A DNA stretch of 64,000 nucleotides from NCBI RefSeq assembly GCF_020745735.1, contig NW_026867509.1, positions 62,001 through 126,000 on the forward strand. Direction: 5' to 3'. Below are positions 5,476 to 52,392 of the stretch, one piece after another (within the stretch, counting starts at the first letter, position 1; the number at the start of each line of letters is the position of its first letter). The notes under the pieces are model-generated. The model was not told where the DNA came from, did not search any database, and saw only the letters and a list, made by a program, of their open reading frames with translations. The translations under genes were made by a program, and so were the position numbers. This stretch comes from Hemiscyllium ocellatum (taxonomy: Eukaryota).

Positions 5476-5484
5476 GTCACACAT

Positions 5485-9964: not shown

Positions 9965-10039
9965 ATTCCATGATTTCAGATCAAGAGAATATATTAGATT
10001 CTTCAGTGTTTGTGATTGGCGTGGATTGACGTTTTGGTT

Positions 10040-25692: not shown

Positions 25693-27269
25693 GGATTCAG
25701 AGTGGAGTTGATTATTCCAATAGCCTGCTTCCAAACTGCAGGGATGCTATATCCTGCCACGCTGTGTTCAAATGACGATGTTTGTGGGGCCCAGTGCACA
25801 GAGATATCGCAGAGTTATCGATAGAGACAAAGCAATAGTTAAATTAACAACTTTCTTTTCTTGATCAAAATAAACTGATCAGAAAAATCTGATCAACCTT
25901 TCTCTTTACTCGAGTCAAATTTCTTTAGTAATTATGAGAAAGTAGTCTGGGAATGTATTTAATTCGGGGAGGGGAAATTATACTACAAAAACACATGTGT
26001 TGTGGAGTTTCAATGGGGAAGAATTGTTCGATGGGAGATGCACAACAGAAATGTTGAGGACTTTTAAGAACGGTTATTGTCAGTGTTGGATAACTTTGTC
26101 CTGCTGAGACAAGCAATGCTTGATAAGGTGAAGGAAATTTGAATTTCAAGCGAAGAGGCGGTTCTTGACGAAAGGAAGAAGGAATCTAACTAAGGGTTGA
26201 GGAAACAAGGATTTGCACAACTTGGCAGGGTAGATGGACAGATTTTAAGAATGGACTGAAGAGAGCTTGGATGGGGCACAAAATAGCTTGAGCAGGAAGA
26301 AGTGGGAAACGCTAAAAGCGTTCTGCACTGACCTGAGGAACAAGAGAATGACCATAGAGAGGAGAGGGCCGATCAGGGATAGTGGAGGAAAGTGGTGCCT
26401 AATAAAATATTTTATTTGTTTATTTATATTCCACCATTGCAAGATTGCATTCCGCTTTCCTAGCACACACCTGGTCCTTTGAAAAGATATTCCAGTCATC
26501 ATACCGCGTTATAGCCACTATGAAGTTGTACATGATATAAATTATATCAGAGAGGCTGACATGTCTTTTGGAAATTACGGAAAATTGATGTGAGAAAAAA
26601 GAACCTGAGGTTCTTTATTTTGAGAGGACGCTTTGTGGTACCACATGGGTTTTTGTGTGAGGCGGAATTATTGGGATGGCTGGCGTAGCCACTTTTGAGG
26701 CACAAATTGAATTTGTAACAAGATAAACGGCAAAAAAGTGAAGAACTGGTAAAATGTAAATAGGTGAGAACCTTTAAAAGAAGTCAACTGTTAAACTGAG
26801 GAATTGCTTATCAAGGATCGAAACCAATATATGTCAAAAAGGTTCGTTCTTTGGTGGAATGATGACAGTGATCGGCTCAATCCATGTGAAGTGACTGAGA
26901 GCCAACATTTCTTCTCATGCTTTCACAAAATTTTCACCGACAGTAACGCGGGGGGATCAGAGAGCCGAAGTAGGGAGAGTGAGGAATAAATGAAAAAAAA
27001 TGTCATCTGGACGAGACGAATGGATAGTAGCCGCAGCAAGGGGATGTGGGAGGGGGAACACAGATTGCAATTGCGCTTCTTTTCGAGTAATACAAAATGC
27101 AAGTGTTGCCCATTGTTTTCAGGATCGACTGCAGTCAATTATCAGAGCTGCCAATAGGCTTTCTATCCCTTTGGTACTGGCACTAACTTTCCATAAATTT
27201 CAGTACCAGGTGCTAACGCCACCAGTATCCTCTGAACTCATCTCGTGGAAAAGAAAGAGCATGAGAGAT

Positions 27270-29737: not shown

Positions 29738-30052
29738 CGTCGTTCAGGAACTGCAGGAGTTCTGGTCGCTGTGGAGGTTTGCTCTGCGACACATTTAAGT
29801 GCAACCTCATTCATTCGGATTGATAATCTCCAGGGGGCCAATTAAATTTCCAGATCAATCTTGCTGACAATTCCATGCACAATGAGATGACCTCACTCCT
29901 TTATGCCTTTCAACAAAGTGGACGATTTCAATTCACTTTGGGACAGGCTTGTAATAATTTTAGTGGTTCGTCTGTTCTGGACTGGGTCAGACCACTCAAT
30001 ACATTCTAAAGCAGAAAGCCCAGGCCATACCTTTCCTATTTGTTTCGGTAAG

Positions 30053-33000: not shown

Positions 33001-33490
33001 CACTTTTTGTTTGAGGTAGGGGACATCTGAAATCAGTTAAGGCTCTCGTGAACGGTTACTCAAACGCAGGAATAGGTATTAAAGATGCAGGTTTTATTAT
33101 TGCTTGAGGTTTTCCGATTAGCTGATACATATGCCACGCCTAGAAAAATTCAACTGCATCGACCAGGCCAGTAAAAATGTCTTTGAATTTTGCTTATTCT
33201 GCATTTTCCTCACTCCTTAGCGACCTCTGACTGGCAGCTCATGTGCCACTCGCAGCACCCTCTTTCTATACTCAACTGCCAATACAATTTGAAGACACTG
33301 CAGCATTGGATTTTTCTAGCGAACTCTGCCTTTGTTGTAGATTCTATTTCCTCCTTTGTTTGTAAAGCCAGGAATTCAAAAAAAAATCGTGAATGGTCGA
33401 TATCTGCGATAATTGTCCTAATTATTCCCCAAGACATCGGCACCTGCCAGTCACAGAAGGAGGCTTTCAGTCTTCAGCAGCACTCCTGTC
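30053..33490 (-). mobile_element. Degenerate Gypsy LTR retrotransposon with Gmr1-like INT-RT-RNaseH order; probable 3' LTR ~30053-30618
   Basis: Minus strand, 5' to 3': integrase (RHFYWPG; PFTRALTDFRCPLPQTKS; 32821-32183 ORF), RT (KLDLLRGCWQVPL, MPFGMENAPDTFQ, YVDD; ~31900-31600), RNase H (KSFKAAVDASAVGVSA; 31284-31078). Purine tract near 30620. Confidence 0.85.
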
Positions 33491-34290
33491 CCTGAACTGA
33501 GGGATTAGGTTAATCACACTGCCCTAAACTCCCAGAAACGTTGCATATGTGCACATTTCGAAAACAGCCAAATATCCTTTGAAAATGAGATTTAATCTGC
33601 TCCTGAGCTCTCTCAAGCAGCTTGTATCATTGCAGAGTTACCTTCTGCACAGATAGGCAATCGTCAAATGCCTTCTGAATAGTGTTCAACATTTGGTACA
33701 TATTTTGGAAGTGGCAATATGGAGATTGTTCTTCCAGAGATTGGGACCACTAGTTTGAACATTTGTGCCTCTATGTCTCTAATGCTATAATTGTGAGGCT
33801 TTTCTACAATGAGTTTAACAGTGTGAGAGTATGACAGCATGATTATGAGAGAGTGTATGTGAAGATGAGAGCTGGTCTGATAATGAATTTTACAGTGTGA
33901 GGACGAGTGTGAATGAAAGATAATTTGTGAGCGTGAAATAAAGAGTGTATGCATATACGTGTGAATGAGTGTGAGCTTTTCCGAGAGTAAATTTAACGAA
34001 GAGAATATGAGAAAGAAACATTGCATCTAAGTTTGAGTGAGAGTTTGAGAATAACTTTAACAGTGTCAGAAATAATGCACGTATTCTTTCTCCACACTTG
34101 CTATTGGATCTCTGAATTCATACTGGTGAGTGACGGGTCATCTAATCTGATCATAGGAAGGTGCTTTCTCGATTAACCTGACTGTGTGCACATTAACTGG
34201 TAAACAACAATAATAGACGTTTTAAATGTCCTGTTCAAAATAACAGTTGAAAAGAAAACCTGCTTAAAAAGATGACACAGGAAAAATTAG

Positions 34291-34380
34291 ACTGGAGAGA
34301 AGCCGTTCACCGTGTCCCACTGTGGGAGGGAGTTTACCCAATCATCAAATTTAGTGAGACATCAGCGAGTTCACCAGTGA
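34291..34380 (+). pseudogene. Single C2H2 zinc-finger remnant
   Basis: TGEKPFTVSHCGREFTQSSNLVRHQRVHQ*; the first Cys is lost. Confidence 0.8.
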
Positions 34381-35329
34381 TGGAAACGTTGTTATTTCAT
34401 GCAGCCACATTCAGTATTGAAAGAAAAGTTTCTTGGTTCAGGGAAATTTACTCCGACTTACTGCCATGTTCAGATAATCGGACTATGGATGTTTTCCCTC
34501 AATGGAATTCCGTCTTTTGTTCCTCTTATTTTGAGCAGACGATTAAAGTAGTTTTTGGCAAAGATATGAAACAGACGGTTCGACCACTCGTGATGTATCA
34601 ATCAAACATCTTCAGCCGTACATAAGGTATTCAACGCTTATATTCAAAGACATATCAACAGGAAGTTCACACTGGATTGAGCAGAACGTCTTCAAAGTGA
34701 CATAATTTTCATTCAGAAGTGGAACAGTGAATCCACATGTGCAAGGGTCTTTGGCAATTGACAGTTTATTAAACATCAACATATGTCATCCAAGCCACTG
34801 ACAACTCGTTTCTTCTTCAATCAAACCATCAGATAAATTGTCCGTATAATCAGCCCAGAACTTCCACTTGCTGAGGAGAGAAACGAGTATGGAATTCAAA
34901 GACAAACAGATTAGTCATGATTTTATTTAATGCAAGAAAAGTAGGGTTTCGTTCCACTCCTAGTTCATGTGTTTCCATGTATATAAGGGAATTAGGCAAT
35001 AGTCCAATTCAATTTTCTACCTCCAACATCACAAATTAAAAGCATAAACAAATGAACAGTTAATGGTGTTCTTGTATCTGATCAAGAGTCTAGAATTTAA
35101 GGAGTTGTTGAAAATTAGTTGCATTCATGAAGTCGATGCAGGCAGCCATTCGCCCCTCAAAAACTCGAAGATATTATGTCCCTAAATATTTGCTTGTGAC
35201 ACATGTAACCTGTTCAGGATATAAAGGTTGCGGCAGGGAGTGAACTTGTGATGGATTTGAAGAGAATAAGAATGAAAAGACATTGCTGGGCTCATGGAAT
35301 GTATTGATCATTCTAATTATTCAAAGGTC

Positions 35330-36190
35330 TTACGCATCCAAAATGCACGTGGTGATAGACGATAGTTTGCGTTTCTGGAGACTAGAGTCTTACGTCAGGC
35401 TTCAGTGCTGGGTTCCTTATTGGTCGTTGCATATACGATCTGTTTCAATGAGAATTAGGCAGGAGATTGGGGTGGAGGATAAGGTAACAATGCTTGCAAT
35501 GACTGAAAACTTCGCCGGGTGATTGACAACAAGGATGACTGTCATAGGTTACAGGCGATTGTAAACAGATTAGTAATGTGGCAGATCAGTGGCAGATGGA
35601 ATTTAATCATGATAATAGTGAAGTGATGCATTTCAAAAGAAGCAAGTAAGATAAGAGAGTATTAATTGAATTCTAACAAACTACGAAATTCAGAGGAAGT
35701 AAGATATTGTGGGGTGCTTGAAAACAGATCGCTGAAGGCGACTGGGAAGGTTTTTGCGACAGTTTAAGATGCATAGGGGGCTCTTGCTATTATCAGTGGA
35801 GGTATATATTAAACCGCAGTGAGGATTTATTGAAGATGCACAGGACTTTGGTTAGGTCACAACTGAAGTTTTGTGCATCCTTCTCGTCTCTCTCAGAATT
35901 GCATGATTGCATTCGAGGTGGAGTAGAGGTGGTATAACATTTTGGCGATATAGATAGACTGGATATAAAGAGAGCTATTCGTCTTCGTTGGAGAATCAGC
36001 AGGAATGGAGCATAATTTAAAAATGAAAGGCAAGAGGGTTAGAGGAGATTTGCGCTGAGAAGAAATTACCCAGAGAGTGTTTGGCTGAAACACATTGCCT
36101 GGGTTGAGGTACGTAAATTCACAATCTTCCAAAATTACTTCGATGAGGGATGGGTTTCGTGCTGCAAAGCATAGAATTCGTGTAGTTTTT
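35330..36190 (+). mobile_element. Old CR1 LINE 3' fragment
   Basis: Degenerate CAGTGCTGGGTTCCTTATTG and CAGTGGCAGATGGAATTTAAT motifs; boundaries approximate. Confidence 0.65.
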
Positions 36191-36537
36191 GTGGTACAGA
36201 CCTGATGGGATGAAAACACGATTCTGAAATGTATGATTCAATGATTTTATTTTCTTGGAGTTATGGTGGTAAGTGGATAAAGAAGCCGTGCTGATCTTGA
36301 CATGGAGGGACAGGTTAACAGTATGATAGATTCAGTCATCTCTCTGCTCAGCAGTTGGATTTCTCAGGCGTTTCTTCAAAAAATCCTGTGACAGTTTCCA
36401 TCCAGTATGCTCTGGTTTCCTGGCAGCCGTGCCGTTGAGCGCTAAACACTGCACTTCGCTTTGTGTTTGCATTTAATTTTGTGATTCTGAGCAACCCAAA
36501 CAATCTCTAACAGAAAGACCCTCAAAAACTGTTCAAT

Positions 36538-36580
36538 AGTTTTTAAACAGAGCTCAGATTGCATTTTTGTTTTTACTGTG
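36538..36580 (-). other. Recombination signal of the V segment, abnormal 27-nt spacer
   Basis: CACAGTA - 27 nt - TTAAAAACT, directly after the V exon. Confidence 0.65.
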
Positions 36581-37036
36581 CGGCTGAAAGCACATAAATA
36601 TATGGCAATGTCAGTCAGCTGCAGCCCCAAAATGGTCAAACTGGTGACTTTTATTCCATGTTGGAGCTCTGCCGACACATGGACTTTGGAATGGGCTCCT
36701 TTCCTTTGTTCTGTATCCCAACACCGCCTCCACACAATACACTGAAGCTCCGTGTCTGATTGTTGCTGACACCAACACAAATAATACTCACTTTCTATTG
36801 TACTGTAGGTACATCTCATAGTCACCGATTCATCCACTCTCCTGCTCTCGGAAAGATGAGACTGAGTTACGGAATTACCATCACTGACATGTGGAACATG
36901 TTCAAAAAGAAGAAGGCAGTATTTTAAAAATATCACTCGAATAACTACGTGCTTCTAGTTTGTAGAAGACACAATTGGTCTATTCCTCACCTGCAATGAA
37001 CATTGCAAATATAAGACAGGTGCTGAATATCCGCAC
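36581..37036 (-). pseudogene. T-cell receptor alpha/delta-type V gene segment (leader 37036-36991, V exon ~36890-36581)
   Basis: The V exon is open: SVTQ...VTMRC TYSTIESEYYLC W CQQ...SLTILGLQLTDIAIYLC AFS (both Cys and the Trp present). 46-nt leader (GTG)RIFSTCLIFAMFIA-G|GTGAGG starts with GTG; the expected acceptor reads TTCCAC, not AG. Confidence 0.85.
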
Positions 37037-37504
37037 GGCTGATGCCGACTGACACTGTCGGTTTCTTTAAAAGCTCAAACTCGGACAGAAGACACAGCAT
37101 GAGAGGCTCCGATTGGCTGAATGTCAGTTTCTAATGTAATGGTTCCATTACAACAGAGTAATCTCACAGACAGAAACCAGAAATAAGTTGACATTCAAAT
37201 TAGATCCTGGTCACCTGCAGCTGTTTCCAATGGAGCAATCTCTCTGATTATGGAGAGTGGTAACAAGGAATTTGCTAATCATCTCCGAAAGTGAAAACGG
37301 CAGCACAAATATAACAAATGGCCAGTAATTATTAAAATGGAAATTGGGAATAGAAGTAGGAACTTTTTTTTAGGAATATCCATATTTCACAAAACTATGC
37401 TGGATAAAGTAACTACTGTGAGGCAGAGTTTTAACTTAATGATGAAACTCCGCTCTTAGCTCCATAAACACAATTCAGATAACTGCCTGGACAAAACACA
37501 GAAT

Positions 37505-38140
37505 TGTAGCAACTAGACAAACACAGTTATCGTCAGATGGGATGGAATTCCTCTTCACTCGTTTCACAAGAAACGTCTTGTGGAGGAGGGATGGGAAACT
37601 GTCACAAAGCTAGTCACGTCTTTTTTCTGAAATTTGCTCCTTGGCTCAAGGACGCTCTGTCCGTGATTTTTTTTTCAGATAAACCAGCCCGGGCTCCAAT
37701 CAGTCTGGTTTGGTACAGAAAAAGAGTTTGAGAGGCATTTTATTTATATGTTAACAGATGAGACTTCAGGCTAAAGTGGTCTTGTTTTAGACGGGGCCTG
37801 CAGGATGCAATTCTCTTAATGAGCTGTTTAGTTCAGTCCTGAACTGGTGAGGATTTCAACACAGAGCTGTGTGGAAACTCTCTCTCTCTCTCTGTCTGCC
37901 CTTGACCTTCTACCTGCCAGTTGTCCGAAAGCAGCGGGCTCCTTTTCGTTTAGAGTACGCCCAAGTACTTTCCAGCATATCATTGTAAATACTGGGGTGT
38001 GAAATACACAATAAACCGTCGAAAGCTCCCCCAACCGTTGGTATGATAGCCTGATGTTCACTTGCATGGATAATTGGGAAAGACAGTTTTGCAAAGGTGG
38101 TATCGGCTCAGTGGAGGTAACTAAAGATTCCAGAAACTGT
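37505..38140 (+). mobile_element. Possible solo LTR
   Basis: Starts TGTAG, contains TATTTATAT, a CT microsatellite and AATAAA; 3' end not defined. Confidence 0.35.
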
Positions 38141-38829
38141 AAAAGTGTCGACAGTTTGTGAAAAATGTCAGTAATCTGACTTCAGGAATAGCCATCAATG
38201 GCAGGGTGCAGTCAATGCAGGACTGAGAGCGTACAATATACTAAGTAATGGAAGTGAGCTTGCAGAGTAAATTGAAATTGGAGGGTACGATGTTATGGAT
38301 ATCAGATATACGTGGCTGCAACGGTATTAGAGCTGATCACGAATGATCCAAATATACTGAAAGGACAGCACTTGGGTAGAATGGTGGTGTTGTTTTGTTT
38401 TGAAGAAATTAATTTTAATCACGAACATGAAGTAATTTAGGGTTGGGACGCCTCGAATTTGTGTGGGAATGTGTTTAGAAGCAACAAAGGAAAAGAGAAC
38501 CTGGTGGAATTAATGGAAAGGCCTCACCCGCGCAAAAAAAAACAATCAGGAAATGGATAAGGCATGTAAGAAAGACACAATTACAACAATCATGAGGCAT
38601 TTCAGTATGTAGGCGGATTGGGAAAGTAACGTGGGTCACGGATTCCCCAAAAAATGGTTCGTGAAATATCCACACGTTGTTTTTAACACATCTTGTGGTA
38701 GAACTAATGAGCAAAGGATAATTCTCAATTTAGTGAGAAGCAATGACGGAGACCTGAATTGCTAGTACAAGTTGAAGGAAATTGTAGGTGATATTGACCA
38801 TACTATTGGAGAATTCGACTTTCAGTTCA

Positions 38830-40110
38830 AGGGAGAGTTGCTTGAATTAGAAGTACCTGATTTAGAAGAAACCCACAAACACATAAATAACATCCTCATC
38901 GGTATAAGGTTCACCAAAGAGGCAGAGAATATTAAGAGACTCCCCTTCCTAGACGTCATAGTTGAACGAAAAGGCAAAGGAGAGCTGCAGACTAGCCTTA
39001 AATGGAAAGTGACACAACTGATCATACGTTCAACAACAGGAACAGCCAACCCAACATCCACAAACAGAGCAACATCAGGACATTATTTAAAAGAGCGCCA
39101 ACGAACTGTAGCAACCTGGACCTCCGAGAAGTAGAGGAAAATATCTATACAATCTATTCAGGTACAACAATTATCCAATAAGTGCATCTCACCAATCCTG
39201 ACACAACAGAAGTAAAAATTAAGACACAACACACCTAGAGACGATGGTCACCCTTCTAGATATTAAATGCGTCTCAGAGATGAAAACCAGACTCATGATA
39301 GTCAACGGACCTAATACGACTGATACAGCTCCGAATGGTTTTATATTACCCCTTACGAGCAAGTAGCAGAACGAACCTCATTTCTAAATACCCTGCAAGG
39401 CCTGCAGAAAACATTACATTGGACAGACGAGCAGGAAGCTATCCACCAGGATACATTAGCACCAAATTGCCACCAAATGACAAGACCAAACATCACTAGT
39501 ATTCATATATACAGACGAAGAGCGACATCAGTTCGCGTGGGGCAATACATCCTTCCTGGGACAGAGTTAACAAAGACATGCACGGGAATTCCTTAAGGCC
39601 TGGTTTTCAAACGGGAAATCCATTCACAAGCATATCAATTTGTGCTCTATTTACCAACCTCTCAGAAAAAGAACTAAGGACCCGATACACAGCATGAGCA
39701 AAACCAATGTAGTGTACAAAATCCCATGCACGGACTGCACAAAACATCATATCGGGCAAACAGGAAGACAGCTAACGATCCGCATCCATGAACACCAACT
39801 AGCCACGAAACGACACGTCCAGCGATCCTTAGTAGCCACACAAGCAGATGACAAACAACAGATATTCGACTGGGACAACACTACTATCATAGGGCAAGCC
39901 AAACAGAGAACAGCCAGGGAATTCCGAGAGGCATGGCACTCATCCACCGATTCTATAGCAAACACATCAAACTGGACCCAACATATCGGCCACTGAAGTG
40001 GACAGCTGGAAATGACAACCGGAAGCAGCAGAGACAAACCACTATGAATGCCGGAGGAAACATAACAGAAGCGCTTCACAGGAGGCTCCCAAGCACTGAG
40101 GATGTCACCG
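38830..40110 (+). mobile_element. Penelope-like fragments (RT C-terminus and GIY-YIG endonuclease)
   Basis: IRFTKEAENIKRLPFLDVIVER; KTNVVYKIPCTDCTKHHIGQTGRQLTIRIHEH; truncated terminal repeat at ~40050-40110. Confidence 0.85.
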
Positions 40111-40499
40111 AGACAGTGATGAATGTATGCAACTCATTGTGGAAGGACGCTGTGCAGGCCAAGTCACAAGTGCCTTTTCGGCAGAGATAGATATGATGAG
40201 CTGAATCATGTTGTCCTGCTTTTTTCTATCAAACTATTAAGCGATTGCCTCAAAGGCGAGATTGAGACTGAATTAAAGCGATTATTGCACAAATTTTCAA
40301 TCACAAACCAGCCACACTTTTTCCCCATCGATTACAATTGTGTTTTTGCAAAGTCAGTGAAAAGAAAAGCTGGCATCATATTGTTCAGCACTCGTTTTCC
40401 TTGACTCCCAAGGATTATTCACCCTGCATCACCAGAATAAATAATGCAATAATAACAAAGTGCAATTCGTAATTATTTGGAATAAACACCCAGCCGTTC

Positions 40500-42380
40500 C
40501 TAATTCATTAACTTAACAATTAGTCTCCAAAGATAATTTCCTGCAGTCTTCAATTCCGCTCTGAATTTTCTCTGTGTCACGGCATAAATACAAGTGTTGG
40601 TGCAACAGCTCAGGAGCTGAAGCATATTTCCACTTTCTTGTCGAATGAATCTTGAATCATTGAAATTGGAACCTGAGAAATAAGGTTCGTTTGTAATTTT
40701 CACATAGAGGAAATCTACCACATACGTCATCCATAACAGGATGAAGCTTCCTGAGATGGTGAAGAGTAAAACAATGGACTTTCTCCGGCTCTCCATCTCC
40801 GGATCATTATAATTTTCTCCACTGCTCGTGCTGGCTCGCAGCCGCCTCCGGCTCCACTGGCTGCAAGGACGTGTCTGACAGTCAGAGCATTGAATAGTAA
40901 AATCAGGAGGAAAGGCAGGCCCGGATTTAAAACACGTGCAAACCAATCATAGGCAGTCCACCCTAATGAAGTATAGAAGCTTGATTTTACGTTACAAAAC
41001 CATGGCACCTTGTTGATTGTATATAGTGGTTCATACATAAAGTACCAGGGGATACGTTTTAAACAGCTCAACAAACCGACTAGTCCTATGACCACAGCCG
41101 CTGTTTTCTCTGTGCAATATTGTGTTTTCAGATTCTGACAACAAATGGCTATGAATCTATCGAAGGTGAAAGCAACAGTTAACCAGACAGAACTTTCTGT
41201 GGCTGCGTAGATGATCACCGTACTGAGTGTACCGGCAGGCGTCATGGACATAAAACTAACTGGGAAATAAATGCCAGTGATCCGATTGAATAGCACAGCG
41301 CTGATAACCACCAAGAGATCTGCCACGGCCATGGAAACCAAATACCGAGTGATGCTTCCAGAAAGATCACATCTTCCACGGGCGAGGATCACGACAGCCA
41401 TCACATTTACTGAAAGGGGGAAAGAAATTGTAAACGACTAACCAGATACATAATATTGCAAGGTTTGATAATTAAGCATACTTTATGATTGGAAACAAAA
41501 GCATTTATTTTTGCAACTCCAATGACACGTCCCTCTCACTAATAATAGCACCAACTTACATTTACGTAGCACCTTTATTATAATTGTTATAAGATGCTTC
41601 AGAAAAAAGTTATAGGGTAAATTTCGATGCTGACATACAGAAGGTAATTTACATATACAAGAAAAACTAAACTTAGCATTGGGTTACCATACATTCTTCA
41701 AATAAACTACAATCAGACTTGAAAACGTCAAGATAATACTGGTATCAAATCAGATTCAAACCTCATGAACATTGATATAGCTGCACAGGTACTTTCACAT
41801 TCATGCTGCCTTTCAAACAAAAGTACATTTTGCTGATCCAAATATAGGACAGGGTCGTCCTTGAAGAGCAAACTAATAATGGCTCAGAATTTTTTGCCCA
41901 ACAGGAAATGTTTCCAAGTCAAGCGTTTTACACTTCAGAGGGGCATAAAGACTCCAGTACGAGGGTGTGTACTGAATCAGAAGGAAAGTTAAATTCATCA
42001 CAATTCCAGAGGATCTTCGGGCTGTGTACTCACTGGAGAGGTGACTAGTGGTGGTTTAACGGAAGTGTATCCGCATGTCGGGCGACTGAAGTGTTGTTAT
42101 TTCCAGAAATAGCATTAACAATGCAGTTGGAGCTTTTGAGACAATCCACAATCCAAGATTGAGATTTGCACTCATGTCAAATTTTTATTATGTGGCTTTT
42201 CATTTCACATCCAGCTGTCGATCATTATGACATGCTTTCAGTTGTCAATGGCCGCACTAACTCATTGAATCAGTTCTTTACACAATTATTTATTCAGTAC
42301 AATGACTCACCGGGGGCTCCAATGGCAGCGAGAATTGGATAGTAAATTGCATACACTGGACCATCTATTCGACCATGCAT
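40500..42380 (-). pseudogene. GPR139-like class A GPCR, gene D (exon 1 42380-42311, exon 2 41409-40500), 1-bp frameshift
   Basis: Exon 1 MHGRIDGPVYAIYYPILAAIGAP-G|GTGAGT; acceptor CCCTTTCAG|TA AAT (VNVMAVVIL); FTFDRFIAICC. One base is missing at ~40850 (GCC[C]GG AGG, ...ARRRLR). Confidence 0.88.
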
Positions 42381-45300
42381 TTTTTTAATATTTGAAAAGT
42401 TGGTCTCTGCTCTCTGATTGTCGATCACAGGCATTGCCTCTGACAGGCTCAGAGACGCACCAATTTATAATGGTTGCAAGTCCACAGAGAGCCAATTATG
42501 CTCTCTCGGCCTTTAGAGTTCTTTGAACAACAGACGCTGCTTGCCACTTCCTATTTGGCAGACATGAGAACGTTGGGAAAAGTAGTCAAATCCTGATGTC
42601 CAATGCTGATGTATTGTATGTGTATAATAGTACAGTGTATAATATGTTTGTACTTCATCAAAATAAAACTGGTTTTCGTCCTGTGGGATTTTGCATCAGC
42701 GACCCAAAAAAGGAATATCATTGATCATGAAACCAGGCTAAGAACACTGTGATTACGTTAAATCAAGTGATTATGGTGATGAAAATGATGATTACATACT
42801 ATTTAAAGTACTTCAACAACAGAAGTTGTACTGATGCAACAGAGAGCGTTTCCACACAATGGAACTTATATACACACAAATGAAAGACAGAAGGTCTAAA
42901 CTCACAATGATAATTATGGAAAATAAATTGCAAATGGGGAAATTTCCAAACTAAATCGGAATGGAACCTCGGTCATTATAATGAAATATAAGTGTTTGTG
43001 AGATATTAGAGGAGATGTAGGAGCGATATTTCAAAATGTCTGACACTGCGACAGTGAAAAAAACCTCAAAAACGTTTCAAGTCAGGTAGATTTGTGATCA
43101 TATGTATAGCTGTCTGGGTTGTTCTAAGCAGTGGAGTTCGCAGGAGCGAAGGTGGTGTTCGATGGAACTCAGTAGATTCTGGGCGTTTCCTGTCAGGGAC
43201 TATTTTGAAAAAATTGAGAGGTGATTTCATTGAAACAATTTCATTTGTCAAGTGCTCCTTTCAGGGTAGAGGCTGCGGACGCTTGGTAGTTTAACAATTG
43301 GTTTTACACAATACTTAAATCAGCTTTTGTGGAAATATATTGTTGTGTGGTTGAATAAAGATAGATAATCATCCATGATCCCATTGAATAATGAAAAATA
43401 CTCAAAACTTTAACTGACTCGAATAATCGCAGTTCTTATGTTCGTACAAAATTAATTGACTATTCAACTGTTTGGTGGAAAGGTCTTCAGCTGAAAATTG
43501 CACCGACCTGAAATTCTTGAGCTGGCTGGGCCATTTGTTTTCATAGTAACATGGAACCAGAAAGCGAATTCAAAGGAATCTTTTAAATTATGAGCGGGTT
43601 CAATGAGATGGATGTGGAGCCATTTTCTTTTCGTTTTAGGTCTCGAATAAATAGGAACCACTCGCATGACAGAGCTTACGATGGAGAGCGTTTCTACACA
43701 GCATCACAATACGGTGCTGAACTCTTCTGTTTATTCGAGCAATTTCTAGAAAAGCTCACTTCGCCTCGTAATCTGTTAAAATGTGAGTGACAGCGAACGT
43801 CCAAATTCCACTATTTAAAGAAAATAAAGTGAACACTCAACAACAATTTTTCACATCTCTAAGACTCGCTTCCACTTAACTGCTTATTAACTGCTTCCAA
43901 GTCTGTAATAATATGCTGTTCCAATAAGATACTTATGAAAATATCAACAATGTAAATTCAAAACCACGCAGCAACTATCGTTTTCTGTTTCTGTCTCTTT
44001 CCATCCGAAATGTCCCTTCGTCGTCTTCTTTCGTTTTACTGTCGACAATTATGAAATGAAAAGGTTATTTTGATAGAGAGTGCTTCGAAATTCTTGGATC
44101 TGTGTTGATGGCACTTTCTCAATATGATGTTCAAATGTCTGCCTTTTTACATTCCCTACAATGGACCATCTTTTTGATTCAAAATGTTGGCAAAACAATA
44201 CATTCAAACTCAATTTCCTTTCATTATCCTGAACCATAATTTAAACTGATCAATTAAATTTGAATTTCTATAAAAACAGCAACCAACACAGGTATCTATT
44301 TTGTAGCCAAATGTTGTATATTTTCAATTCTCCAGTACACTCTGAGACGGCTCCCTAGTCTTTTACACAGGTGCTTGTGAGCTCTTAAGATAGCTCACCA
44401 TTCACTGTCGTATAGGAACAGTGCACACCATCAACTTCATAACAAGAGAAACGCATGAAAACAATAATCTCGTAGAAATATGCAGTGAGTGGAGAATAAA
44501 AATTGAGTTTGAAGGAAGGAATATGGAGGCACACATATTTAAGGGCAATAGCTCGCTCTTGGTCGATTGGCTCCAGTGGAGAAGAAACGTGTGTATCCTC
44601 ATTCTGAATCGACCAACCTGTCCCAAGATCCAAGAGAGATTTTAAAGTAAAATTCAGACAAAGGTGCGCTCAGTGAACACGGGAGAGAATCGTCAAATGG
44701 GTTGTTGGAACTGAAATTACCACACATGCAGAAAGAGCACTTTTCACTGAGCAATAGTAAAACCGCAGCAGAATATGCACAAATGGAAAGCAACCAACAG
44801 TTGAGAGAATTAAAGGCACGATCTCACGCTGGTCACACCACAACCTCTGTATTATCGGTATAGAATTCACGTTAACCTTCATGTGTAAACTGAAACAAAT
44901 GTAAAATTGAAAACAAAGTCGATCCTCTTGCAGCATGGAAACAATGAAACGGAATGCAAAACAGGCAGAAGGTCTCATGGCTTGTTCAATTTATAGCGAT
45001 GCTTTGTTTTTCGCGTGATTTTCCTTGTCATGAAATCTGTACTTTCTATTGCATTTTCCAATGTGCCATGATGGAACACTGTTTGATTACGTCCCTGGCC
45101 GTCTTCATCATTTGTCACATTAAAGTTTGTAATTTATTGTTGAATCCACAGACACTTCTGTAAAATTTAATAGTCCATTTTTCTCACATGAATCATGTCA
45201 CTTTGGCATCTAGTATATTGCAATACAGATAAAATACGAAATCAGATTTAATCCAGAGATTAATGGGTTTCCTTTATAAAATGAGAAGAGGAAAATCTAT

Positions 45301-45382
45301 AAAATGAAAATAACCTGTAGATTCAGTTCACTGGCCTGTACAAAGCATTATATTTTTCTGCCTGTACAAAACATTATAATCA

Positions 45383-45420
45383 GGTTTCGTTCTGCTCTGT
45401 CCGTGGTCGACGTCAATGTG
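45383..45420 (-). other. Candidate 22/23-spacer RSS
   Basis: CACATTG - 22 nt - AACGAAACC (or a 23-nt spacer with ACGAAACCT). Confidence 0.45.
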
Positions 45421-45502
45421 TACATATTCACACCATAGTTAGGTTTTGGTACAGTTCTCTCCGTGCTCTAGCTTATTGCGTCTGTCATCGTTATCCTGTT
45501 CA

Positions 45503-45540
45503 TGTTTTTGCACAGCTCTCGCCGTCTCTGTATCACTGTG
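45503..45540 (-). other. Near-consensus 22-spacer RSS
   Basis: CACAGTG - ATACAGAGACGGCGAGAGCTGT (22 nt) - GCAAAAACA. Confidence 0.75.
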
Positions 45541-45600
45541 CCTTCGGCAGTGGAGGTTTGTTAAGGGGGACTCTGGGACCCCCCCAAAAAAAACTGGAGT
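45541..45600 (-). pseudogene. Putative internally deleted V-segment remnant
   Basis: Acceptor-like TTTAATCCCACAG, then 60 nt containing CAG AGT CCC CCT (QSPP, FR1-like) and ending CAC TGC CGA AGG, abutting the RSS. Interpretation uncertain. Confidence 0.35.
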
Positions 45601-47039
45601 CTGTGGGATTAAACACGAAGTTTGTTAAATTACCCTTTATCTAGGAAACATCCAATTGGTGATAACAGCAATTCAAGCATATTTCTTCTTTTGTAGCAGG
45701 TTCCAGACGTTTTATCTCTAATTAACATCAAAATGACAAGCAGAGAGATGTCCTTTTCTTTTGGAAAATAGAACAGCAAGTTGTTCTGATCAGGAGCACA
45801 TAGCAGAATGACTCAAGAATAACTCGCAAACAGGAATTCGTAGAAAATAAATGAAGCATTGAATAATTCCAGGAACACGGGAAAATGTCAGGGGAATGGT
45901 CACAATTTGAAAGTAAATTTGAAAAATCTGCAGGAAGCTGATGGAGAGTAAAATGAGAGTCTGTTCTTTCTAATTCCTTGATTTTAATTGAATACTGTGG
46001 ATAATACAAACATTTCAGAGATAGTTTAATAGTTAATTCTCCTTTTCACTGAGCCACTTGCTTTCAGAATTAGTTGATAGAGAGTAAAATCAGAGGATGT
46101 GTTTGTGTTTTCATGCATATTTGAAATCTGGAACCCACAGTCCAAATCCGAGCTCAATGCTCCTTCCTAGTTATGTATTCGTAGGTGATCGGGAGCTGTC
46201 CGTCGAACTGCTTCAATCTACTGAGTGCAAGTACATCCAAAATTCAGTGAATGAGTGTTTCCAGGATTTGACTGATCGGCAATGAAAGAATGAATCATCT
46301 TTATCAGTCAGGATGGTGTTGGAACTTACAGGTATTGGTTCTTCCACGTATCCACTTTCTTGGTTATATCACAGTCCACAGAAATATTCAATTGAGTGCA
46401 GCTTGGTCCAAGCTGAGAACGGTCAAATGAAAATTGAATTGAATAATGAATAGACCGAGTACAGAAGAGAAGATGGCCATTTGACCTGGCATGCTTGCAC
46501 TAACTGTCTGAAGGAGAATCTCATATGTGTGAACGAAACAAGTTCTTGCCCAGCTCCAATATTCCTTCACTGCTTCTGTAAGCTCCGCTACGATGAATTA
46601 ACGCAATTGGCACGTATGCTTTGCTAAACATAATTTTGACTGATCTCGCTGCCTCAGGAAACAGTGCACAAGCATCCCAAGATTCTCTGTTCAGCTCACT
46701 AGTGCCCGACAGTTTAGGAAGACAGTCTTATCTTGTTACATCTGCCCTCATTACCGAGAAGGCGTTTGAGTGTCATTGCCGTGAGTCTTGAGTTAAATGT
46801 ATTCTTGAAAAGGTAAGGATTGAAAATGTCTTCCCGAAAATGTATTATCAAATTTAGATTCGATTTGCACTGATATGCCAATATGATCATTTAGAAAATC
46901 CAGGATTGGAAATCTCAAGTCTTTTTGCACTCTGAGGGATATGCCAGCGGACACCCAGCCTCCAGTCGCACAAGCAACTTCCGATGAATCAGCAAACATG
47001 GATACAAAATGCTAAGCGATTTGAGATTCCACATCCTTT

Positions 47040-47340
47040 TCACGTTTTTGTCCGTTTTGCGTGTGGGAATCTTTCAAAGGATTTTCTGAAATCCGCATGA
47101 ATTACATCAAGTACATTATCCACACCTACTTTACCATCACCACTTCAAATGATTCAACTTTGAAATGATTGGCATGAGTCAAAACTGTATTAGCTATCCC
47201 TGATAAAGGTTTCCTCTCGAAGCAGAGTGTAATTCTGTCCATCAGAAAAGATGTCAATATGGCAATCACTGCTCTATATTCAGACCACATTTCTTGAAAA
47301 TTGGAAGCCACACTAGCTGGTCTCCAGTACTCTTGCACCC
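47040..47340 (-). mobile_element. Old CR1 RT fragment
   Basis: VDNVLDVIHADFRKSFERFPH (YLDFxKAFDKVPH-like) and EYWRPASV. Confidence 0.65.
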
Positions 47341-47544
47341 GCTCTGAGACCGCAGTAACACCAAATGTTTTGGGGCAACTACTCTTTGATGTTCTTCCTC
47401 ATTTCCCATCGCAGACTAAGATACAATACACCCGGACCTTGGATTTCCTCTCTGATCTCCCAGATGAAGTGATGTATGTCTCAAAAATAAACTGAGACTG
47501 AAAATTAATTTGACAGTTGACAGGAGACCTTTGGAGTCATTTAC

Positions 47545-47597
47545 CTTCTGTGACAGTCACAATGGTTCCACGTCCATCCACAGGATCATATTTCCAA
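47545..47597 (-). other. NAR/IgH-type J gene segment
   Basis: WKYDPVDGRGTIVTVTE-G|GTAAAT: a GxGTxVTV motif with a phase-1 donor. The 5' RSS is degenerate (best candidate CAGAATG-23-ACCAACCTC at 47598-47636). Confidence 0.6.
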
Positions 47598-47932
47598 CAG
47601 AATGACTGCTCTCTCAGTCAGGCCAGAACCAACCTCATTTTGCAAAACAATCCACCCTGCCTCTAATTCGTCAAAAGATTTCCATCAATTAATAATATTT
47701 CATACTTTTCACATTCTGTTGAATCGGAGAGTAATTCAGGAGACTCTGGGATCTTAGCAAGTTGACCCAGAAACAAACATCACAGATGAACACTTGATGG
47801 AAATGCAGATAAAATGCCATGACAAGATAACCGAAGAAGGATATTTTGACAATTTTTTCCCACCAAGGACACATAATACAATGAATCACTTTTTCAAACG
47901 AGAGAGCAATGAACGTATCATTATTGCACTAT

Positions 47933-48005
47933 GATATTTGTTCAGCTCTCATCAATTGTGGTTTCCAAATAACTGTACACAGTGTTTCTAATCAACATAA
48001 ACATC
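47933..48005 (-). other. D gene segment (core 47961-47977) flanked by two 12-spacer RSSs
   Basis: CACAGTG-12-ATAAACATC (47978-48005) and CACAATT-12-ACAAATATC (47960-47933) around a 17-nt core TACAGTTATTTGGAAAC. Confidence 0.7.
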
Positions 48006-48059
48006 TCCGGTTATCTTCTTTGTGCCAAATCTGCAAATGTAAGATGATTTGGCCGTGTC

Positions 48060-51000
48060 ACTTTTTCCCATTGGTCCAAGTATGAGCGAGCTAAGGGACT
48101 TAGCCATGGGAATGACATAGGTAAAAACTGGGGTGAGATCCGAAAAGCAGAATTCAGTGAGTTAGCAGCCAAGTTCAAAACCAGGACCAAAGAAGTAATA
48201 ATCTCCGGATTGCTACAAGTGCCGCTTGCCAGTCAGAGTAGAAATGAAAAAAAAAGCAGTATGAATGCATGACTTGAGATATAGTGCAAGAGGTAGGGGT
48301 TAACATGTTTGCAACAGTGGGACCGATTCTGGGGGTGATGGTACTACTACAGTTTCGATGGTCTATGTCTGGGCCAGACAGGAACCAATGGCCATGCCAG
48401 TGCTTTTATTAACTCTTCCGGGGAAGGGTAAACTAACTTTGCAAGGGGATGGGAACTAAATGAGGAGTACAGTGGGCCGTAAGGAGTTATAACTAAAGCC
48501 TGAAAAGAACTCGATCATGAAGTGACCATGACTAAGGTGAAAAATAGGCAGGGAGCAGATGATGAATGCAAAGGGAGAGGTGATCTGAGGTGCATTTGTT
48601 TTAATGCGAGATGTGTCGTCGGCAAATCAGATAAACTTAGGTCTTTGATTAGTATCTGGGAGTATGATGGTGTTGTTATTACTGAGACGTGGTAGATGGA
48701 AGGGCATGATTGGCAACTAAATATCCCAGAAGATAGATGCTTCCGGAGGGATAGAGAGGGAGGAAAAGGGGTGGTTGAACAGCATTACTGGTCAAGATGG
48801 TACCACAGGTATTCAGGATTCGAACAGTGAAGAAATCGGGGCAGAGGTCAGACACAGGAAGGGTGCTGTAACAATGTTGGGGCTGTACCGCAGGCCTCCC
48901 AACAGCAAGTGTGAGGTAGTGGTACAAATATGTCAACAAATTGTGGAAAGATTTAGGAACAACGGGGTGGTGGCGATATGAGATTTTATGTTTCCAAACA
49001 ACGACTGGGGATCAAGTGTGTTAGAAGTTTAATTGGAGCAGAATTTGCAAGGAGCATCCAGGTCAGACTTATAAAGCCGGATGTAAATACTGCAAAGGGA
49101 AAGTTCGACTTGGTGTTGTCGAATGAGCTTGGCCATTTGTTTGATGTTTCAGTAGGGTAGAAATTTGGGAATACTGATCACAATAATGTAAGTTTTAGAA
49201 TACTCATGAACAAAGGTAAGAGTTGCCCTCAATGAAGAGTTTTATACTGGGGCAAGGCCAACTATAGAAAATTTCGGCAGGAGTTAGGGAATGTGGATTG
49301 TGATCAGCTGATGAAGGCAAATCCGCAGTTGATATGTGTGAGGCTTTTAAAGAGAGATTGGTTTTTAAACAGAGGATAGGTAAGTACATGTGAAAAGGAA
49401 GGGGGAGAATTGGCAAGATCATGGGAACTATGAATGACAGGTAAAATTATGAAATTTGGGAAAAGGAAGAAACAAAGCATGCATAATGTTCAGGTGACTG
49501 AACACAGACAAAGCTTTGGAAGGATATCAGAAAAGATTTGCCAGTCTGAACGGAGGTATTAAGAGGGTAAAAAGGGGTCATAAATCATTTCAACTGGCGG
49601 GATTAAGGTAACTTCCAAAGCGTTCAGATATGAGGAGCAAGTGGGTAATTAGAGAAAGGACCAGCCCACTCAAGGGCAGAGGAGGAAAGTTATGCGTAGA
49701 GTCAGAAAAAAGGGATGTGATTCTTCCTGAGTACTTTGCGGCGATATTTTTCCAGGAGAGGCACATGATGTATGAGGTTTGGAATAGATATTTGATTATT
49801 CTAGGTCAAGTCAGCATAGGAGGGAGGAAGTGTTGTGTGTTCAGGCAATAAGTCGGACAAGTTACCAGCTCAGGATGGGATACATCCCAGGTTTAGTGAA
49901 GGAAATGTGAGAGGAAATACCTGGGGCCTTCACAGATAGTTGTGCCACATCTTTGAGCAAGGGTGAGGTCCCAGAGGACTGGAGAATTTCAACTGTTGTC
50001 CCCTATTTTTGGATGGGTGGCAGGAATAATTCAGATAATTATAGATCAGTGAGCCTGACGTCAGTGGGAGGGAAGCTGCTGGAGAAAACAGTGAGGGATG
50101 GAATCGAATCCCATTTGGAACAAAATGTGTTTATCAGTGATAGGCACCATTGTTCTGTGCGGGGAAGGTTATGTCTTACCTACTTAACAGACCTGTTCAA
50201 GGAAGGGACATAGTTTCTTGATGGAGGAAGGGCTGTATATGTCATATACATGGACTTCAATAATGCGTTTGTTGAGTTACCCATGGTACGCTGATGGCGA
50301 AAATGAAGTTGCAAGAGGTCCAGTATGTACGAGGTAGATGGCTGCACAGTACGACAAAGAGAGTACTGGTGGAAAGGAGTTTCTCAAAAGGAATACTTGT
50401 GAACAGTGATGTTCCACACGGGATCTGCATTGCGAACACATTTGTTGCTGGTATACATAAATGATCTGTGAGTAGGTATAAGTGGCCTGATTAGTAAGTT
50501 TGTTGTGGGCACTGCAGTTGGTGGAGTATCAGATACTGAAGAGTACTGTCAAAATATGCAGCAAAATACAGATAGATTGGAGAGTTGGGTGGAGAAACGA
50601 CAGATGGAGTTCAATGCGGTAAATGTGATGTGATGCATTTTTGGCAGAGCCAAATCAAAATCGAAATATACCATAAATGGAAAAGCCCTGCGGAAAAATG
50701 ATGTACAGAGAGATTTGGGAGTTCAGATTCATTGTGTCCTGAAGGTGGCAACACAGGTCGATAGAATGTTTAACAAGGCATACTGCATCCTTTCCTTCAT
50801 CGGAAGGGGAATTCAGTTCAAGCGTTGGCACGTCATGTTACACTTGTATCAAATTTTAGTTCGGCCTCATTTGGAAAACTGCATGCAGTTCTGGTTGCCA
50901 CAGGACTAAAGGATGTGCATGCTTTGTAGAGGGTGCCGAGGAGGTTCCCTGGGATGGTGCCTAGTATGGGGAGCGCGAGTGATGAAGACAGTTTGCACAG

Positions 51001-51270
51001 ATTTGGATTACTTTCATGAGAACGACGGAGGTTGAGCGGAGGAAATGACTGAGTTCCTCAAGATCATGAGAAGTGTTCACAGGATGGACAGCAAGAAGCT
51101 TCTTTTCCTGACTGGGACATTCAATTACCAGGTGTCACGAGTTCAACGTGAGGGGGAAAAATTGAAAGCAGGTATCGTGGAAAGCTCTCTATGCAGTGGA
51201 CAGAGGGTGCCTGGAATGCGTTCTCAGTAGAGGTGGTACAGGCGGTTATGATAGCGTCATTGATATCTGG
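48060..51270 (+). mobile_element. Degenerate CR1 LINE (ORF1 esterase-like region, APE, RT, 3' end)
   Basis: GNDIG...KTRTKEVIISGLL; DLRCICFNARCVVGKSDKLRSLISIWEYDGVVITETW; RPHLENCMQFWLP. Confidence 0.9.
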
Positions 51271-52006
51271 ATTGGTGCAGGTTTGGAAGTTCGAAGGACT
51301 TCTTCCTGTGGTGGAATTATTTTTATTGTTGTTTGTTCTAAATAAATAGTTATGGTGCATTTGAGTGGGATAAACTTCTGAAAGTCAATGCAGTCTCGAT
51401 AAGCTGATTGGCGGCCTCTTTCGGCACCGGAGCAATTCAAGGATTCCAGTCACCTAACAATTAACTAAATTGAGACATGTTTGCATCTTAACCCGTGCCT
51501 GTGTCTTGTCGCTGAAACACATGTCATGTTTTACAGTATCAACTCATTTCCAAAAACATACGAGGCTTTCTTGAGATTGGAAGATTTTTCATTCTTCTTT
51601 GTTGATGTCGAATGATTTTTCAAGTGGGGAGGGTTGCAACGAGGTGTGGATGTCTTGCACACCAGTCAAAGAAAATAAGCAATTCGCGGTAGCAGGATTG
51701 AAAGCTGGAGGAAGAACATGAGTTAATTATAGTTACACAAATCACTGAATTATTCAGTGCCGATTACAAGCTTTACAGCTCATTCTATAACTTCCAGCTA
51801 AAAGGCAGGTATTCTGCTGAATGAAAATCCAGAAATAGAACGAGATAAAATAACAGATAATTGGTATCGCTTATTTTCAATTTTGTCTCAACACCCTGCA
51901 AATAAGGCTTCCCCTACGTTTATTTTTAAATACTGAGCAGAGGGCTACTTTTCAACTCTATCGTGCTCAGTGGACAGGCACCGAAGAGAGGAGGAGGAGA
52001 ATGTTA

Positions 52007-52392
52007 GGACTGCAGATTCTGGAGATGACAACGAAAAAGTGTGGTGCTGGAAAAGCAGAGCAGGTCAGGCAGCATGTGAGAAGCAGGAGAGTCGATGTTT
52101 CTGACATGAGACTGTCATCAGAAATCGAGAAGGCCCAAGGGAGCAGAGAGACAAGTAGAAGCAAGATAGGACTGGGAGATGGTAGTCGGGTAGCGACAGG
52201 CACATGAAATTTGGGGTTGATGGTGGTTGATCGGAACACGGCATCGGGCAGACAGATGGGAAGAAAGATGAACGGACACCTTGCCATACACCACGCTCCC
52301 CATCAAGCTCCTGATGGAGTACTTCGGCCTAAAATGTCGACTCTCCTGCCCCTCGGCTGCTGCCTTACCTGCTGTGCTTTTTCTTAGTGCCA
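52007..52392. mobile_element. Inverted Penelope-like terminal repeats (paralog of 3363-3746)
   Basis: 52007-52125 vs 52309-52392 in inverted orientation. Confidence 0.7.

What the first reader, a model, noticed from the sequence alone, without database searches (positions are those of the whole stretch)
45383..48005. Decayed D(12/12)-J(NAR-like)-leaderless V cassette resembling a NAR-TCR unit, inside a GPCR cluster
Seen: on the minus strand, a 17-nt core flanked by two 12-RSSs. About 365 nt downstream is a J (DGRGTIVTVT, Asp where IgH has Trp) with a phase-1 GT donor. About 1.95 kb further is an acceptor-like site, a 60-nt V-like stub and a near-consensus 22-RSS. Established: shark IgH/IgNAR clusters use closely spaced segments with 12/12 terminal D segments, and NAR-TCR joins a NAR V-D-J onto a leaderless supporting V-delta. 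Inference: this is a broken NAR-TCR-like cassette whose upstream V was displaced or deleted at the CR1 starting at ~48060. None of this appears in the ORF track.
Basis: partly seen in the sequence, partly recalled or inferred. Interest (0 to 1): 0.8.

Follow-up and report, generated by a model that had tools for sequence, protein, structure and literature searches.

The report
Dead shark NAR-TCR gene cassette remnant
This stretch of epaulette-shark DNA is a broken, non-working leftover of a rearranging immune-receptor gene unit, most likely the sharks' two-headed NAR-TCR; it is a pseudogene of a known kind rather than a new system.

Summary
On the minus strand lie a 17-nt D-like core between two 12-spacer RSSs (48005-47933), an IgH-type J (DGRGTIVTVTE, exon end 47545, GT donor, phase 1) and, 1.95 kb further, a near-consensus 22-spacer RSS (45540-45503). 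Together they are far beyond chance: the strict J motif arose in 0 of 300 simulated windows, an RSS this good in 2%, and the 12/12 D layout in 5%.

Three additions. The RSS is the first of three tandem 60-nt RSS units (45540, 45480, 45420). Their spacer is homologous to a 70-nt-period RSS array fetched from the sevengill shark Heptranchias perlo, next to the orthologue of the neighbouring GPR139-like gene. An intact-looking TCR alpha/delta-type V exon lies 8.5 kb downstream on the same strand.

The unit is dead. No V-set or C-type Ig domain was found near it, the J has no recognisable RSS, the "V stub" shows no V homology, and a LINE abuts the D.

The D, J with donor, intron, then V-type RSS order fits a truncated NAR-TCR cassette. 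I could not fetch an intact cassette for comparison, so that label rests on architecture, context and unchecked earlier notes. Genome: Hemiscyllium ocellatum. Modest interest.

The parts
47933..48005 (-). D-like segment: 12-RSS (GATGTTTAT-12-CACTGTG), 17-nt core TACAGTTATTTGGAAAC open in all three frames, 12-RSS (CACAATT-12-ACAAATATC)
   Evidence: Sequence read. RSS scores 14.0 and 10.0 bits. The paired layout is unique in the window and arose in 2 of 40 simulations.
47545..47613 (-). IgH-type J pseudo-segment, reading EQSFCWKYDPVDGRGTIVTVTE. The exon ends at 47545 in phase 1, with donor GTAAAT at 47544-47539.
   Evidence: Motif unique in six frames and found in 0 of 300 simulations. The best PDB matches are antibody heavy-chain FR4, e.g. 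YFDLWGRGTLVTVS, at a weak E of 0.4-0.5.
47614..47651 (-). Possible decayed 22-spacer RSS of the J (TTGTTTTGC-22-GACTGAG); not significant
   Evidence: Scores 4.4 bits; the best RSS-like site anywhere near the J scores 5.8 bits, which is background.
45601..47544 (-). About 1.95 kb between the J donor and the acceptor-like site (the putative former J-to-supporting-V intron). No protein-domain signal.
   Evidence: No Pfam V-set or C1-set among ORF pieces of 40 aa or more. No Rfam family. No repeat copy elsewhere in the window.
45541..45600 (-). 60-nt 'stub' between an acceptor-like cccacag and the first heptamer; holds a T8G7 run; V origin not demonstrable
   Evidence: no V-set hit at E up to 10; no tblastn match to the window's own V.
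45382..45540 (-). Tandem array of three RSS units with a 60-nt period. U1: CACAGTG-22-GCAAAAACA. U2: CGCAATA-23-ACCAAAACC. U3: CACATTG-23-ACGAAACCT.
   Evidence: In-register identity of U2 to U3 is 25/39, against a background of 10.5 +/- 3.4. Aligned with Heptranchias units in A5. blastn to the L007 array gives E 0.003. An HMM built from Heptranchias units alone has U1 and U2 as its best non-self hits.
48050..52400 (+). 5'-truncated LINE abutting the D's 5' nonamer; part of the segmental duplication that begins at 48347
   Evidence: tblastx matches 49878-50894 and 51995-52381 to the RVT_1-bearing ORF at 19130-20806(-). The 5' limit near 48050 is my own reading of the translation; Pfam gave no support there.
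36574..37003 (-). Context: TCR alpha/delta-type V gene segment (V exon 36885-36581, ends YLCAFS, heptamer CACAGTA 36580-36574, poor nonamer), same orientation as the relic
   Evidence: Pfam V-set 2.6e-10. Best PDB hits are human TCR alpha and delta V domains, E 1.5e-11. Sequence.
40366..42575 (-). Context: frameshifted GPR139-like gene (coding exon 41437-40503, conserved 5' exon region 42575-42220), 2.8 kb downstream of the RSS array
   Evidence: Pfam 7tm_1; two overlapping frames; 77% and 69% nucleotide identity to the Heptranchias orthologue in L007.

Best explanation
This is the dead, truncated remnant of a NAR-TCR-type cassette in the V region of the epaulette shark's TCR alpha/delta-linked antigen-receptor complex.

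A working cassette would have a leader and NAR-type V with a 23-RSS, a D flanked by two 12-RSSs, and a J with a 23-RSS and a splice donor. An intron would follow, then a leaderless supporting V-delta that ends in 23-type RSSs. RAG would join the V, D and J of the first domain and, separately, join the supporting V to D-delta and J-delta. Splicing of J to the supporting V would then give a V-V-C delta chain.

What survives here is the D, the J exon with its donor, the former intron, and the tandem RSS array that once followed the supporting V.

What is lost: the NAR V is gone, with a LINE abutting the D. The J's RSS has mutated away. The supporting V body is deleted or unrecognisable, and RSS units 2 and 3 have decayed heptamers or nonamers. 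Nothing here can make a receptor chain.

Shown: the elements, their non-random nature, their order and strand, the array and its cross-species homology, and the TCR V context.

Inferred: that the lost parts were a NAR V and a supporting V-delta.
For: - The element set is non-random: J motif in 0 of 300 simulations, top RSS in 2%, D layout in 5%. All lie within 2.6 kb, on one strand and in one order.
- The J is heavy-chain-like (GRGTIVTVT; best PDB matches are antibody FR4) and has a phase-1 GT donor. It is followed not by C exons but by V-type 23-class RSSs pointing the same way. To my knowledge only the NAR-TCR layout has that order (Criscitiello 2006, as summarised in PMC1845163 and PMC12227049).
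- The RSS is a three-unit tandem array, homologous in its spacer to a 5.3-unit array in Heptranchias perlo.
- Earlier notes of this scan report such arrays behind NAR-TCR supporting V-delta genes of this genome, including several on this same sequence piece 0.4-1.9 Mb beyond the window's end. Another note describes a V(23)-(12)D(12)-(23)J-intron-V(23) cassette. These are leads, not evidence.
- A TCR alpha/delta-type V exon lies 8.5 kb downstream in the same orientation.
- The genome is Hemiscyllium ocellatum. Published work places NARTCR V segments in its TCR alpha/delta-linked antigen-receptor complex (PMC12227049).
Against: - No NAR-type V and no supporting V body is present, so the two defining domains cannot be seen.
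- I could not obtain any intact NAR-TCR cassette to align. Protein word searches found no candidates, phmmer gave 0 hits, and most shark assemblies gave no DNA.
- The one external array I did fetch (Heptranchias L007) also has no V-set ORF upstream. So from my own data the arrays are not shown to follow a V.
- The J RSS and the stub carry no signal.
- The stub's Cys-containing frame does not match the J splice frame.
Confidence: 0.65

Rival explanations
1. It is the relic of an IgH-type minicluster (IgM, IgW or IgNAR: V-D-D-J-C) whose D-J piece came to lie next to an unrelated orphan TCR V RSS array. This could happen through the deletions, LINE insertion and segmental duplication that shaped the region.
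For: The J is heavy-chain-like. [quoted passage not shown]
Against: No C1-set or other Ig domain in the 6 kb after the J, before the next GPCR gene. Only one D is visible, whereas IgNAR clusters have three (PMC4279169). The RSS array sits about where a spliced supporting V would end and points the same way. No IgH V within 16 kb upstream.
Confidence: 0.2
2. A working or partly working element: the near-consensus first RSS (perfect heptamer, 22-nt spacer, 7/9 nonamer) is still cut by RAG in thymocytes. It would act as a cryptic or decoy signal that rearranges to D-delta without making protein.
For: U1 is the best 23-type RSS in the window at 22.3 bits. The Heptranchias orphan array keeps five perfect heptamers with no V-set ORF in front of it.
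Against: U2 and U3 are decaying, which argues against selection here. No expression or rearrangement data could be consulted. A 22-nt spacer and an imperfect nonamer lower efficiency.
Confidence: 0.1
3. Chance resemblance: RSS-like and J-like strings that arise in AT-rich repeat-laden DNA.
For: The two D RSSs singly score at background level, and the J RSS is absent.
Against: Joint occurrence, order and strand; simulations; the tandem array and its cross-species homology; a TCR V exon nearby.
Confidence: 0.03

Closest known systems
NAR-TCR (doubly rearranging TCR delta of cartilaginous fish; Criscitiello, Saltis and Flajnik 2006, as summarised in PMC1845163, PMC5931798 and PMC12227049)
   Same: A heavy-chain-like J carrying a splice donor is followed on the same strand by a V-type 23-class RSS instead of C exons. 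A single D sits between two 12-RSSs. The unit lies among TCR alpha/delta-type V segments, in a shark.
   Different: No NAR V, no leaderless supporting V body, no usable J RSS. It cannot rearrange productively or encode anything, so it is a pseudogene fragment.
Shark IgH miniclusters (IgM, IgW, IgNAR)
   Same: Close spacing of D and J (about 380 nt), a 12/12 D, and a VTV-type J with a phase-1 donor.
   Different: No C exons after the J, no V before the D, one D only, and RSS units of V type lie downstream.
Tandem 23-RSS arrays reported by this scan behind NAR-TCR supporting V-delta genes (unpublished AI notes)
   Same: Period of 60 nt, each unit a heptamer-spacer-nonamer, same genome. The spacer motif ATACAGAG(C)ACGG is shared with the Heptranchias array that I fetched myself.
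   Different: Only three units, two of them decayed, and no V in front.

Membership tests
NAR-TCR cassette | N-terminal NAR-type V gene (leader, V exon lacking the canonical Trp of WYRK, 23-RSS) upstream of the D | tested here: not met
   No V-set hit among ORF pieces of 50 aa or more in 48400-64000, nor among pieces of 40 aa or more in 47885-48514. A LINE occupies about 48050-52400.
NAR-TCR cassette | D and J segments dedicated to the NAR V, with compatible RSSs (12/12 D, 23-type J) | tested here: inconclusive
   The D with two 12-RSSs is present and non-random as a pair. The J exon is present, but its RSS is not recognisable, best 5.8 bits.
NAR-TCR cassette | J exon ends in a splice donor that joins it to a downstream V exon rather than to a C exon | tested here: inconclusive
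   Donor AAG|GTAAAT in phase 1 is present. An acceptor-like site lies 1.95 kb downstream. No C-type Ig domain follows. No transcript data were available.
NAR-TCR cassette | Leaderless supporting TCR delta V exon with a Cys in CDR1 (PMC1845163) | tested here: not met
   Only a 60-nt stub precedes the RSS. No V-set signal at E up to 10 and no tblastn match to the window's own V.
NAR-TCR cassette | Location within the TCR alpha/delta locus among V segments, in the same transcriptional orientation | tested here: met
   TCR alpha/delta-type V exon at 36885-36581 on the same strand. Species is Hemiscyllium ocellatum. Locus description in PMC12227049.
Tandem RSS array family of sharks | Head-to-tail units of 60-70 nt, each with heptamer, 22-23-nt spacer and nonamer, sharing a spacer sequence | tested here: met
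   Three units in register. Alignment A5 with five Heptranchias units has 17 invariant columns, including spacer positions. blastn E 0.003; nhmmer top non-self hits.
Shark IgH minicluster | Constant-region Ig exons downstream of the J | tested here: not met
   No C1-set or other Ig-domain hit among ORF pieces of 40 aa or more between the J and the GPCR gene (41410-47545).

The most novel reading that the evidence does not exclude
Tandem RSS arrays may persist without any V gene. They lie next to orthologous GPR139-like genes in two sharks from what I recall to be two deeply split lineages: three decaying units in the epaulette shark, and five near-identical units with perfect heptamers in Heptranchias. 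That would suggest the arrays have a life of their own, for example as RAG-binding or RAG-cut sites that shape locus deletion or accessibility, rather than being mere appendages of the supporting V-delta.
Probability: 0.07. Interest if true: 0.6.

Novelty: new member of a known kind. Interest (0 to 1): 0.3.

Why it matters
On its own this is a pseudogene. It adds one decayed copy to the catalogue of NAR-TCR-type cassettes in the epaulette shark. It also shows that such cassettes were carried along by a segmental duplication spanning at least 15.6 kb, together with GPR139-like genes.

Its wider use is as a neutral comparator. It shows how the cassette and its tandem RSS array decay once selection stops: the heptamer and nonamer of units 2 and 3 are already damaged while unit 1 is still near consensus. 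That helps judge whether the extra RSS copies behind working supporting V-delta genes are under selection.

The Heptranchias array, which also has no V, raises the question of whether these arrays can persist independently.

Tried and rejected
1. Protein word searches with the window's V exon and with the open frame across the RSS array found no candidates.

2. phmmer of the array frame against 1.84 billion representatives gave 0 hits. So predicted proteins that read through such arrays could not be used to fetch intact cassettes.

3. A metagenome scan for a generic two-unit RSS pattern hit only a bacterial coding gene. Irrelevant.

4. Fetching orthologous loci through GPR139-like proteins. 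The epaulette shark, Heterodontus, Mobula and Chiloscyllium assemblies gave no DNA. Six Heptranchias loci were readable, and only L007 holds an array.

5. Searches of this scan's notes by sequence were blank, which means nothing.

6. Pfam gave no support for the LINE in 48.0-50.9 kb, and the atlas look-up was uninformative. tblastx to the window's own RT ORF settled it.

7. An RSS-like site at 12948(-) scoring 16.8 bits has no V in front of it. It is a chance match and a useful gauge of background.

8. The key NAR-TCR paper (PMC1458790) and the Ott 2021 review (PMC7909615) are not held. NAR-TCR gene layout is therefore cited from secondary sources and from my memory.

9. I considered whether the V at 36.6 kb could be the supporting V spliced from this J. 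I rejected this: a GPCR gene lies between them, and the V exon's acceptor is in phase 2 while the J donor is in phase 1 (my reading).

Full report
**What is there.**

- D-like element: GATGTTTAT, a 12-nt spacer, CACTGTG (48005-47978), a 17-nt core (47977-47961) open in all three frames, then CACAATT, a 12-nt spacer and ACAAATATC (47960-47933).
- J-like exon: about 380 nt further the frame reads EQSFCWKYDPVDGRGTIVTVTE. The exon ends at 47545 with one base of the next codon, followed by GTAAAT.
- Stub and RSS: 1,945 nt further an acceptor-like cccacag (ending at 45601) precedes 60 nt, then CACAGTG, a 22-nt spacer and GCAAAAACA (45540-45503).

**Is it more than chance?**

I scored RSSs with an approximate weight matrix recalled from published compilations, so the bit values are only relative.

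- The 22-RSS is the best 23-type site in the whole window, at 22.3 bits against 18.5 and 16.8 for the next two. Only 2% of 200 Markov-simulated windows reach that score.
- The two D RSSs are ordinary singly, at 14.0 and 10.0 bits.
- A 12/12 pair around a short core is unique in the window and arose in 2 of 40 simulations.
- The J motif is unique in six frames, and the strict form G.GT.VTV arose in 0 of 300 simulations.
- Its best matches among solved structures are the FR4 of antibody heavy chains, for example YFDLWGRGTLVTVS. These are weak, as expected for 22 residues (E 0.4-0.5).

All three features lie within 2.6 kb, on one strand and in one order. Chance is excluded for practical purposes.

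- The RSS is the first of three tandem units in exact 60-nt register, starting at 45540, 45480 and 45420. Each has a heptamer, a 22-23-nt spacer and a nonamer. U2 and U3 share 25 of 39 positions, against a background of 10.5 +/- 3.4. U1 aligns to U2 with one gap at about 72% by my count (alignment A5). Tandem Repeats Finder missed the array because it is too diverged.
- The window holds one clear antigen-receptor gene. This is a TCR alpha/delta-type V exon at 36885-36581 on the same strand. Pfam V-set scores 2.6e-10, and the best solved-structure hits are human TCR alpha and delta V domains at E 1.5e-11.
- The organism is the epaulette shark, Hemiscyllium ocellatum. The GPCRs are GPR139-like, and the best hit, at 92% identity, is an annotated protein of that species. 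Published work places NARTCR V segments and TCR alpha/delta-type V exons in one antigen-receptor complex in this species (PMC12227049).

**What is missing.**

- I passed ORF pieces to Pfam for three spans: pieces of 40 aa or more in 41410-48514, and pieces of 50 aa or more in 48400-64000 and in 20810-40469 (a few short pieces there were left out). The V at 36.6 kb was the only immunoglobulin-type domain found.
- So there is no NAR-type or other V before the D, no V body before the RSS array, and no C exon after the J.
- The stub gives no V-set signal even at E 10. Its only V-like trait, LHCRR before the heptamer, is in a different frame from the one the J donor and the proposed acceptor would give.
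- The J has no recognisable RSS. The best site scores 5.8 bits, and a possible decayed TTGTTTTGC-22-GACTGAG scores 4.4.
- Upstream of the D, a LINE on the plus strand runs from about 48.05 to 52.4 kb. tblastx matches 49878-50894 and 51995-52381 to the window's own RVT_1-bearing ORF.
- From 48347 on, the sequence is a segmental duplicate of window 2-17170 at 87-92% identity. The alignment starts at the window's first bases, so the duplication may extend over the cassette. I could not read upstream of position 1.

**Comparison with other sharks.**

I could not obtain an intact NAR-TCR cassette. Word-based protein searches found no candidates. phmmer of the frame across the array gave nothing. 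Most shark assemblies were too large to deliver DNA.

The Heptranchias perlo assembly was readable.

- Locus L007 surrounds the orthologue of the GPR139-like gene just downstream of the relic. The coding exon is 77% identical in nucleotides and a 5' exon region 69%.
- L007 carries, on its minus strand at 23297-22924, five and a third tandem RSS units with a 70-nt period: CACAGTG, ATACAGAGCACGGGAGTGAGT, ACAAAAACC.
- The spacer is plainly the same sequence as in the window's U1 (ATACAGAGACGGCGAGAGCTGTG) and U2. blastn gives E 0.003.
- An HMM built from the Heptranchias units alone finds U1 and U2 as its best non-self hits across the window and five loci, at E 0.077 and 2.5. These are marginal singly, but they are adjacent and in register.
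- Five other Heptranchias GPR139-like loci hold no array.
- The array family is therefore old, and in both species it lies near this particular GPCR gene, although position and orientation differ.
- The Heptranchias array also has no V-set ORF in the 2.2 kb available upstream.

**Earlier notes of this scan.**

Several notes on the same genome state that the leaderless supporting V-delta of the NAR-TCR is followed by tandem 23-RSS arrays. Some give the unit length as about 60 nt, and some concern sites on this same sequence piece 0.4-1.9 Mb beyond the window's end. One first-reader note describes a decayed cassette as L-V(23)-(12)D(12)-(23)J, intron, leaderless V(23).

These are unchecked AI notes. 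I verified only that my locus has an array of that period and that the family exists in another shark. I did not verify the association with the supporting V.

**Interpretation.**

A heavy-chain-like J with a splice donor, followed on the same strand by V-type RSSs rather than C exons, and preceded by a single 12/12 D, among TCR alpha/delta V segments of a shark, is the layout of a NAR-TCR cassette. I know of no conventional locus with that order; this rests on my knowledge of Criscitiello et al. 2006, whose paper was not held.

I therefore read the region as a truncated, dead NAR-TCR-type cassette (confidence 0.65). The main rival is a fragment of an IgH minicluster placed beside an orphan V RSS array (0.2). 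In either case it is a fossil: it cannot rearrange productively or encode a domain. The first RSS unit is still near consensus and might be cut by RAG as a cryptic site, but that is speculation.

**Verdict.**

This is a new, decayed member of a known kind, and interest is modest (0.3). Its main value is as a neutral comparator for the tandem RSS arrays, and the V-less arrays in two species are a side lead.

Noticed in passing
window 36574-37003 (-): TCR alpha/delta-type V gene segment with odd features. It has four extra cysteines (LCWCQQ, LQCIVW, RRCWD), a CACAGTA heptamer with no good nonamer at 12 or 23 nt, and no convincing leader exon: the nearby ATG mini-exon donor is in phase 1 while the V exon acceptor is in phase 2. 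An alternative 46-nt intron would give the signal-peptide-like MFIAVIRVIFLKYCLLLF. It may be a pseudogene.
   Followed up: partly
L007 22924-23297 (-), Heptranchias perlo JAYJKY010001183.1: Orphan tandem RSS array of five and a third units, 70-nt period, units highly similar to one another (alignment A5), all with a perfect CACAGTG. It lies 7.3 kb downstream of and convergent with a GPR139-like gene. No V-set ORF in the 2.2 kb upstream; a possible decayed extra unit sits just 5' of it, and a CR1-like LINE tail lies at about 24540-25400.
   Followed up: partly
window 2-17170 and 48347-64000: Segmental duplication at 87-92% identity, carrying a LINE, a GPR139-like gene copy (10847-11461 and 57431-58300) and flanks. 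Copy 1 starts at the window edge, so the true unit may be longer, about 48 kb, and may include the relic.
   Followed up: partly
window 10847-11461, 27273-28190, 40503-41437, 57431-58300 (all -): Four GPR139-like GPCR genes or pseudogenes. At least two are frameshifted (27.3-28.2 kb and 40.5-41.4 kb), and none has an in-frame ATG before TM1 in the same ORF. In sharks this family is a large expansion, with many paralogues on single contigs in several species.
   Followed up: partly
Heterodontus francisci locus around P0100 (no DNA): A 242-residue V-set gene model on the opposite strand spans the whole 28-kb locus of the orthologue of the window's GPCR at 40.5 kb. This suggests the same GPCR-antigen-receptor neighbourhood in a third shark order.
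   Followed up: no
window 17907-20806 (-): LINE with long open frames (467 and 558 aa, RVT_1 1.4e-28), interrupted by the N run at 18575-18882, which I left untouched.
   Followed up: no
window 32186-34026 (-): LTR-retroelement remnants (integrase C-terminal and RT RNase H Pfam hits) between the V gene and a GPCR pseudogene.
   Followed up: no
window 48061-48032 (-): Just 5' of the D's nonamer the frame reads SDTAKSSYICR, faintly like a V FR3 end (DTA..Y.C). A stop lies 11 codons upstream and no RSS follows. It overlaps the LINE's 5' end and is probably chance.
   Followed up: partly
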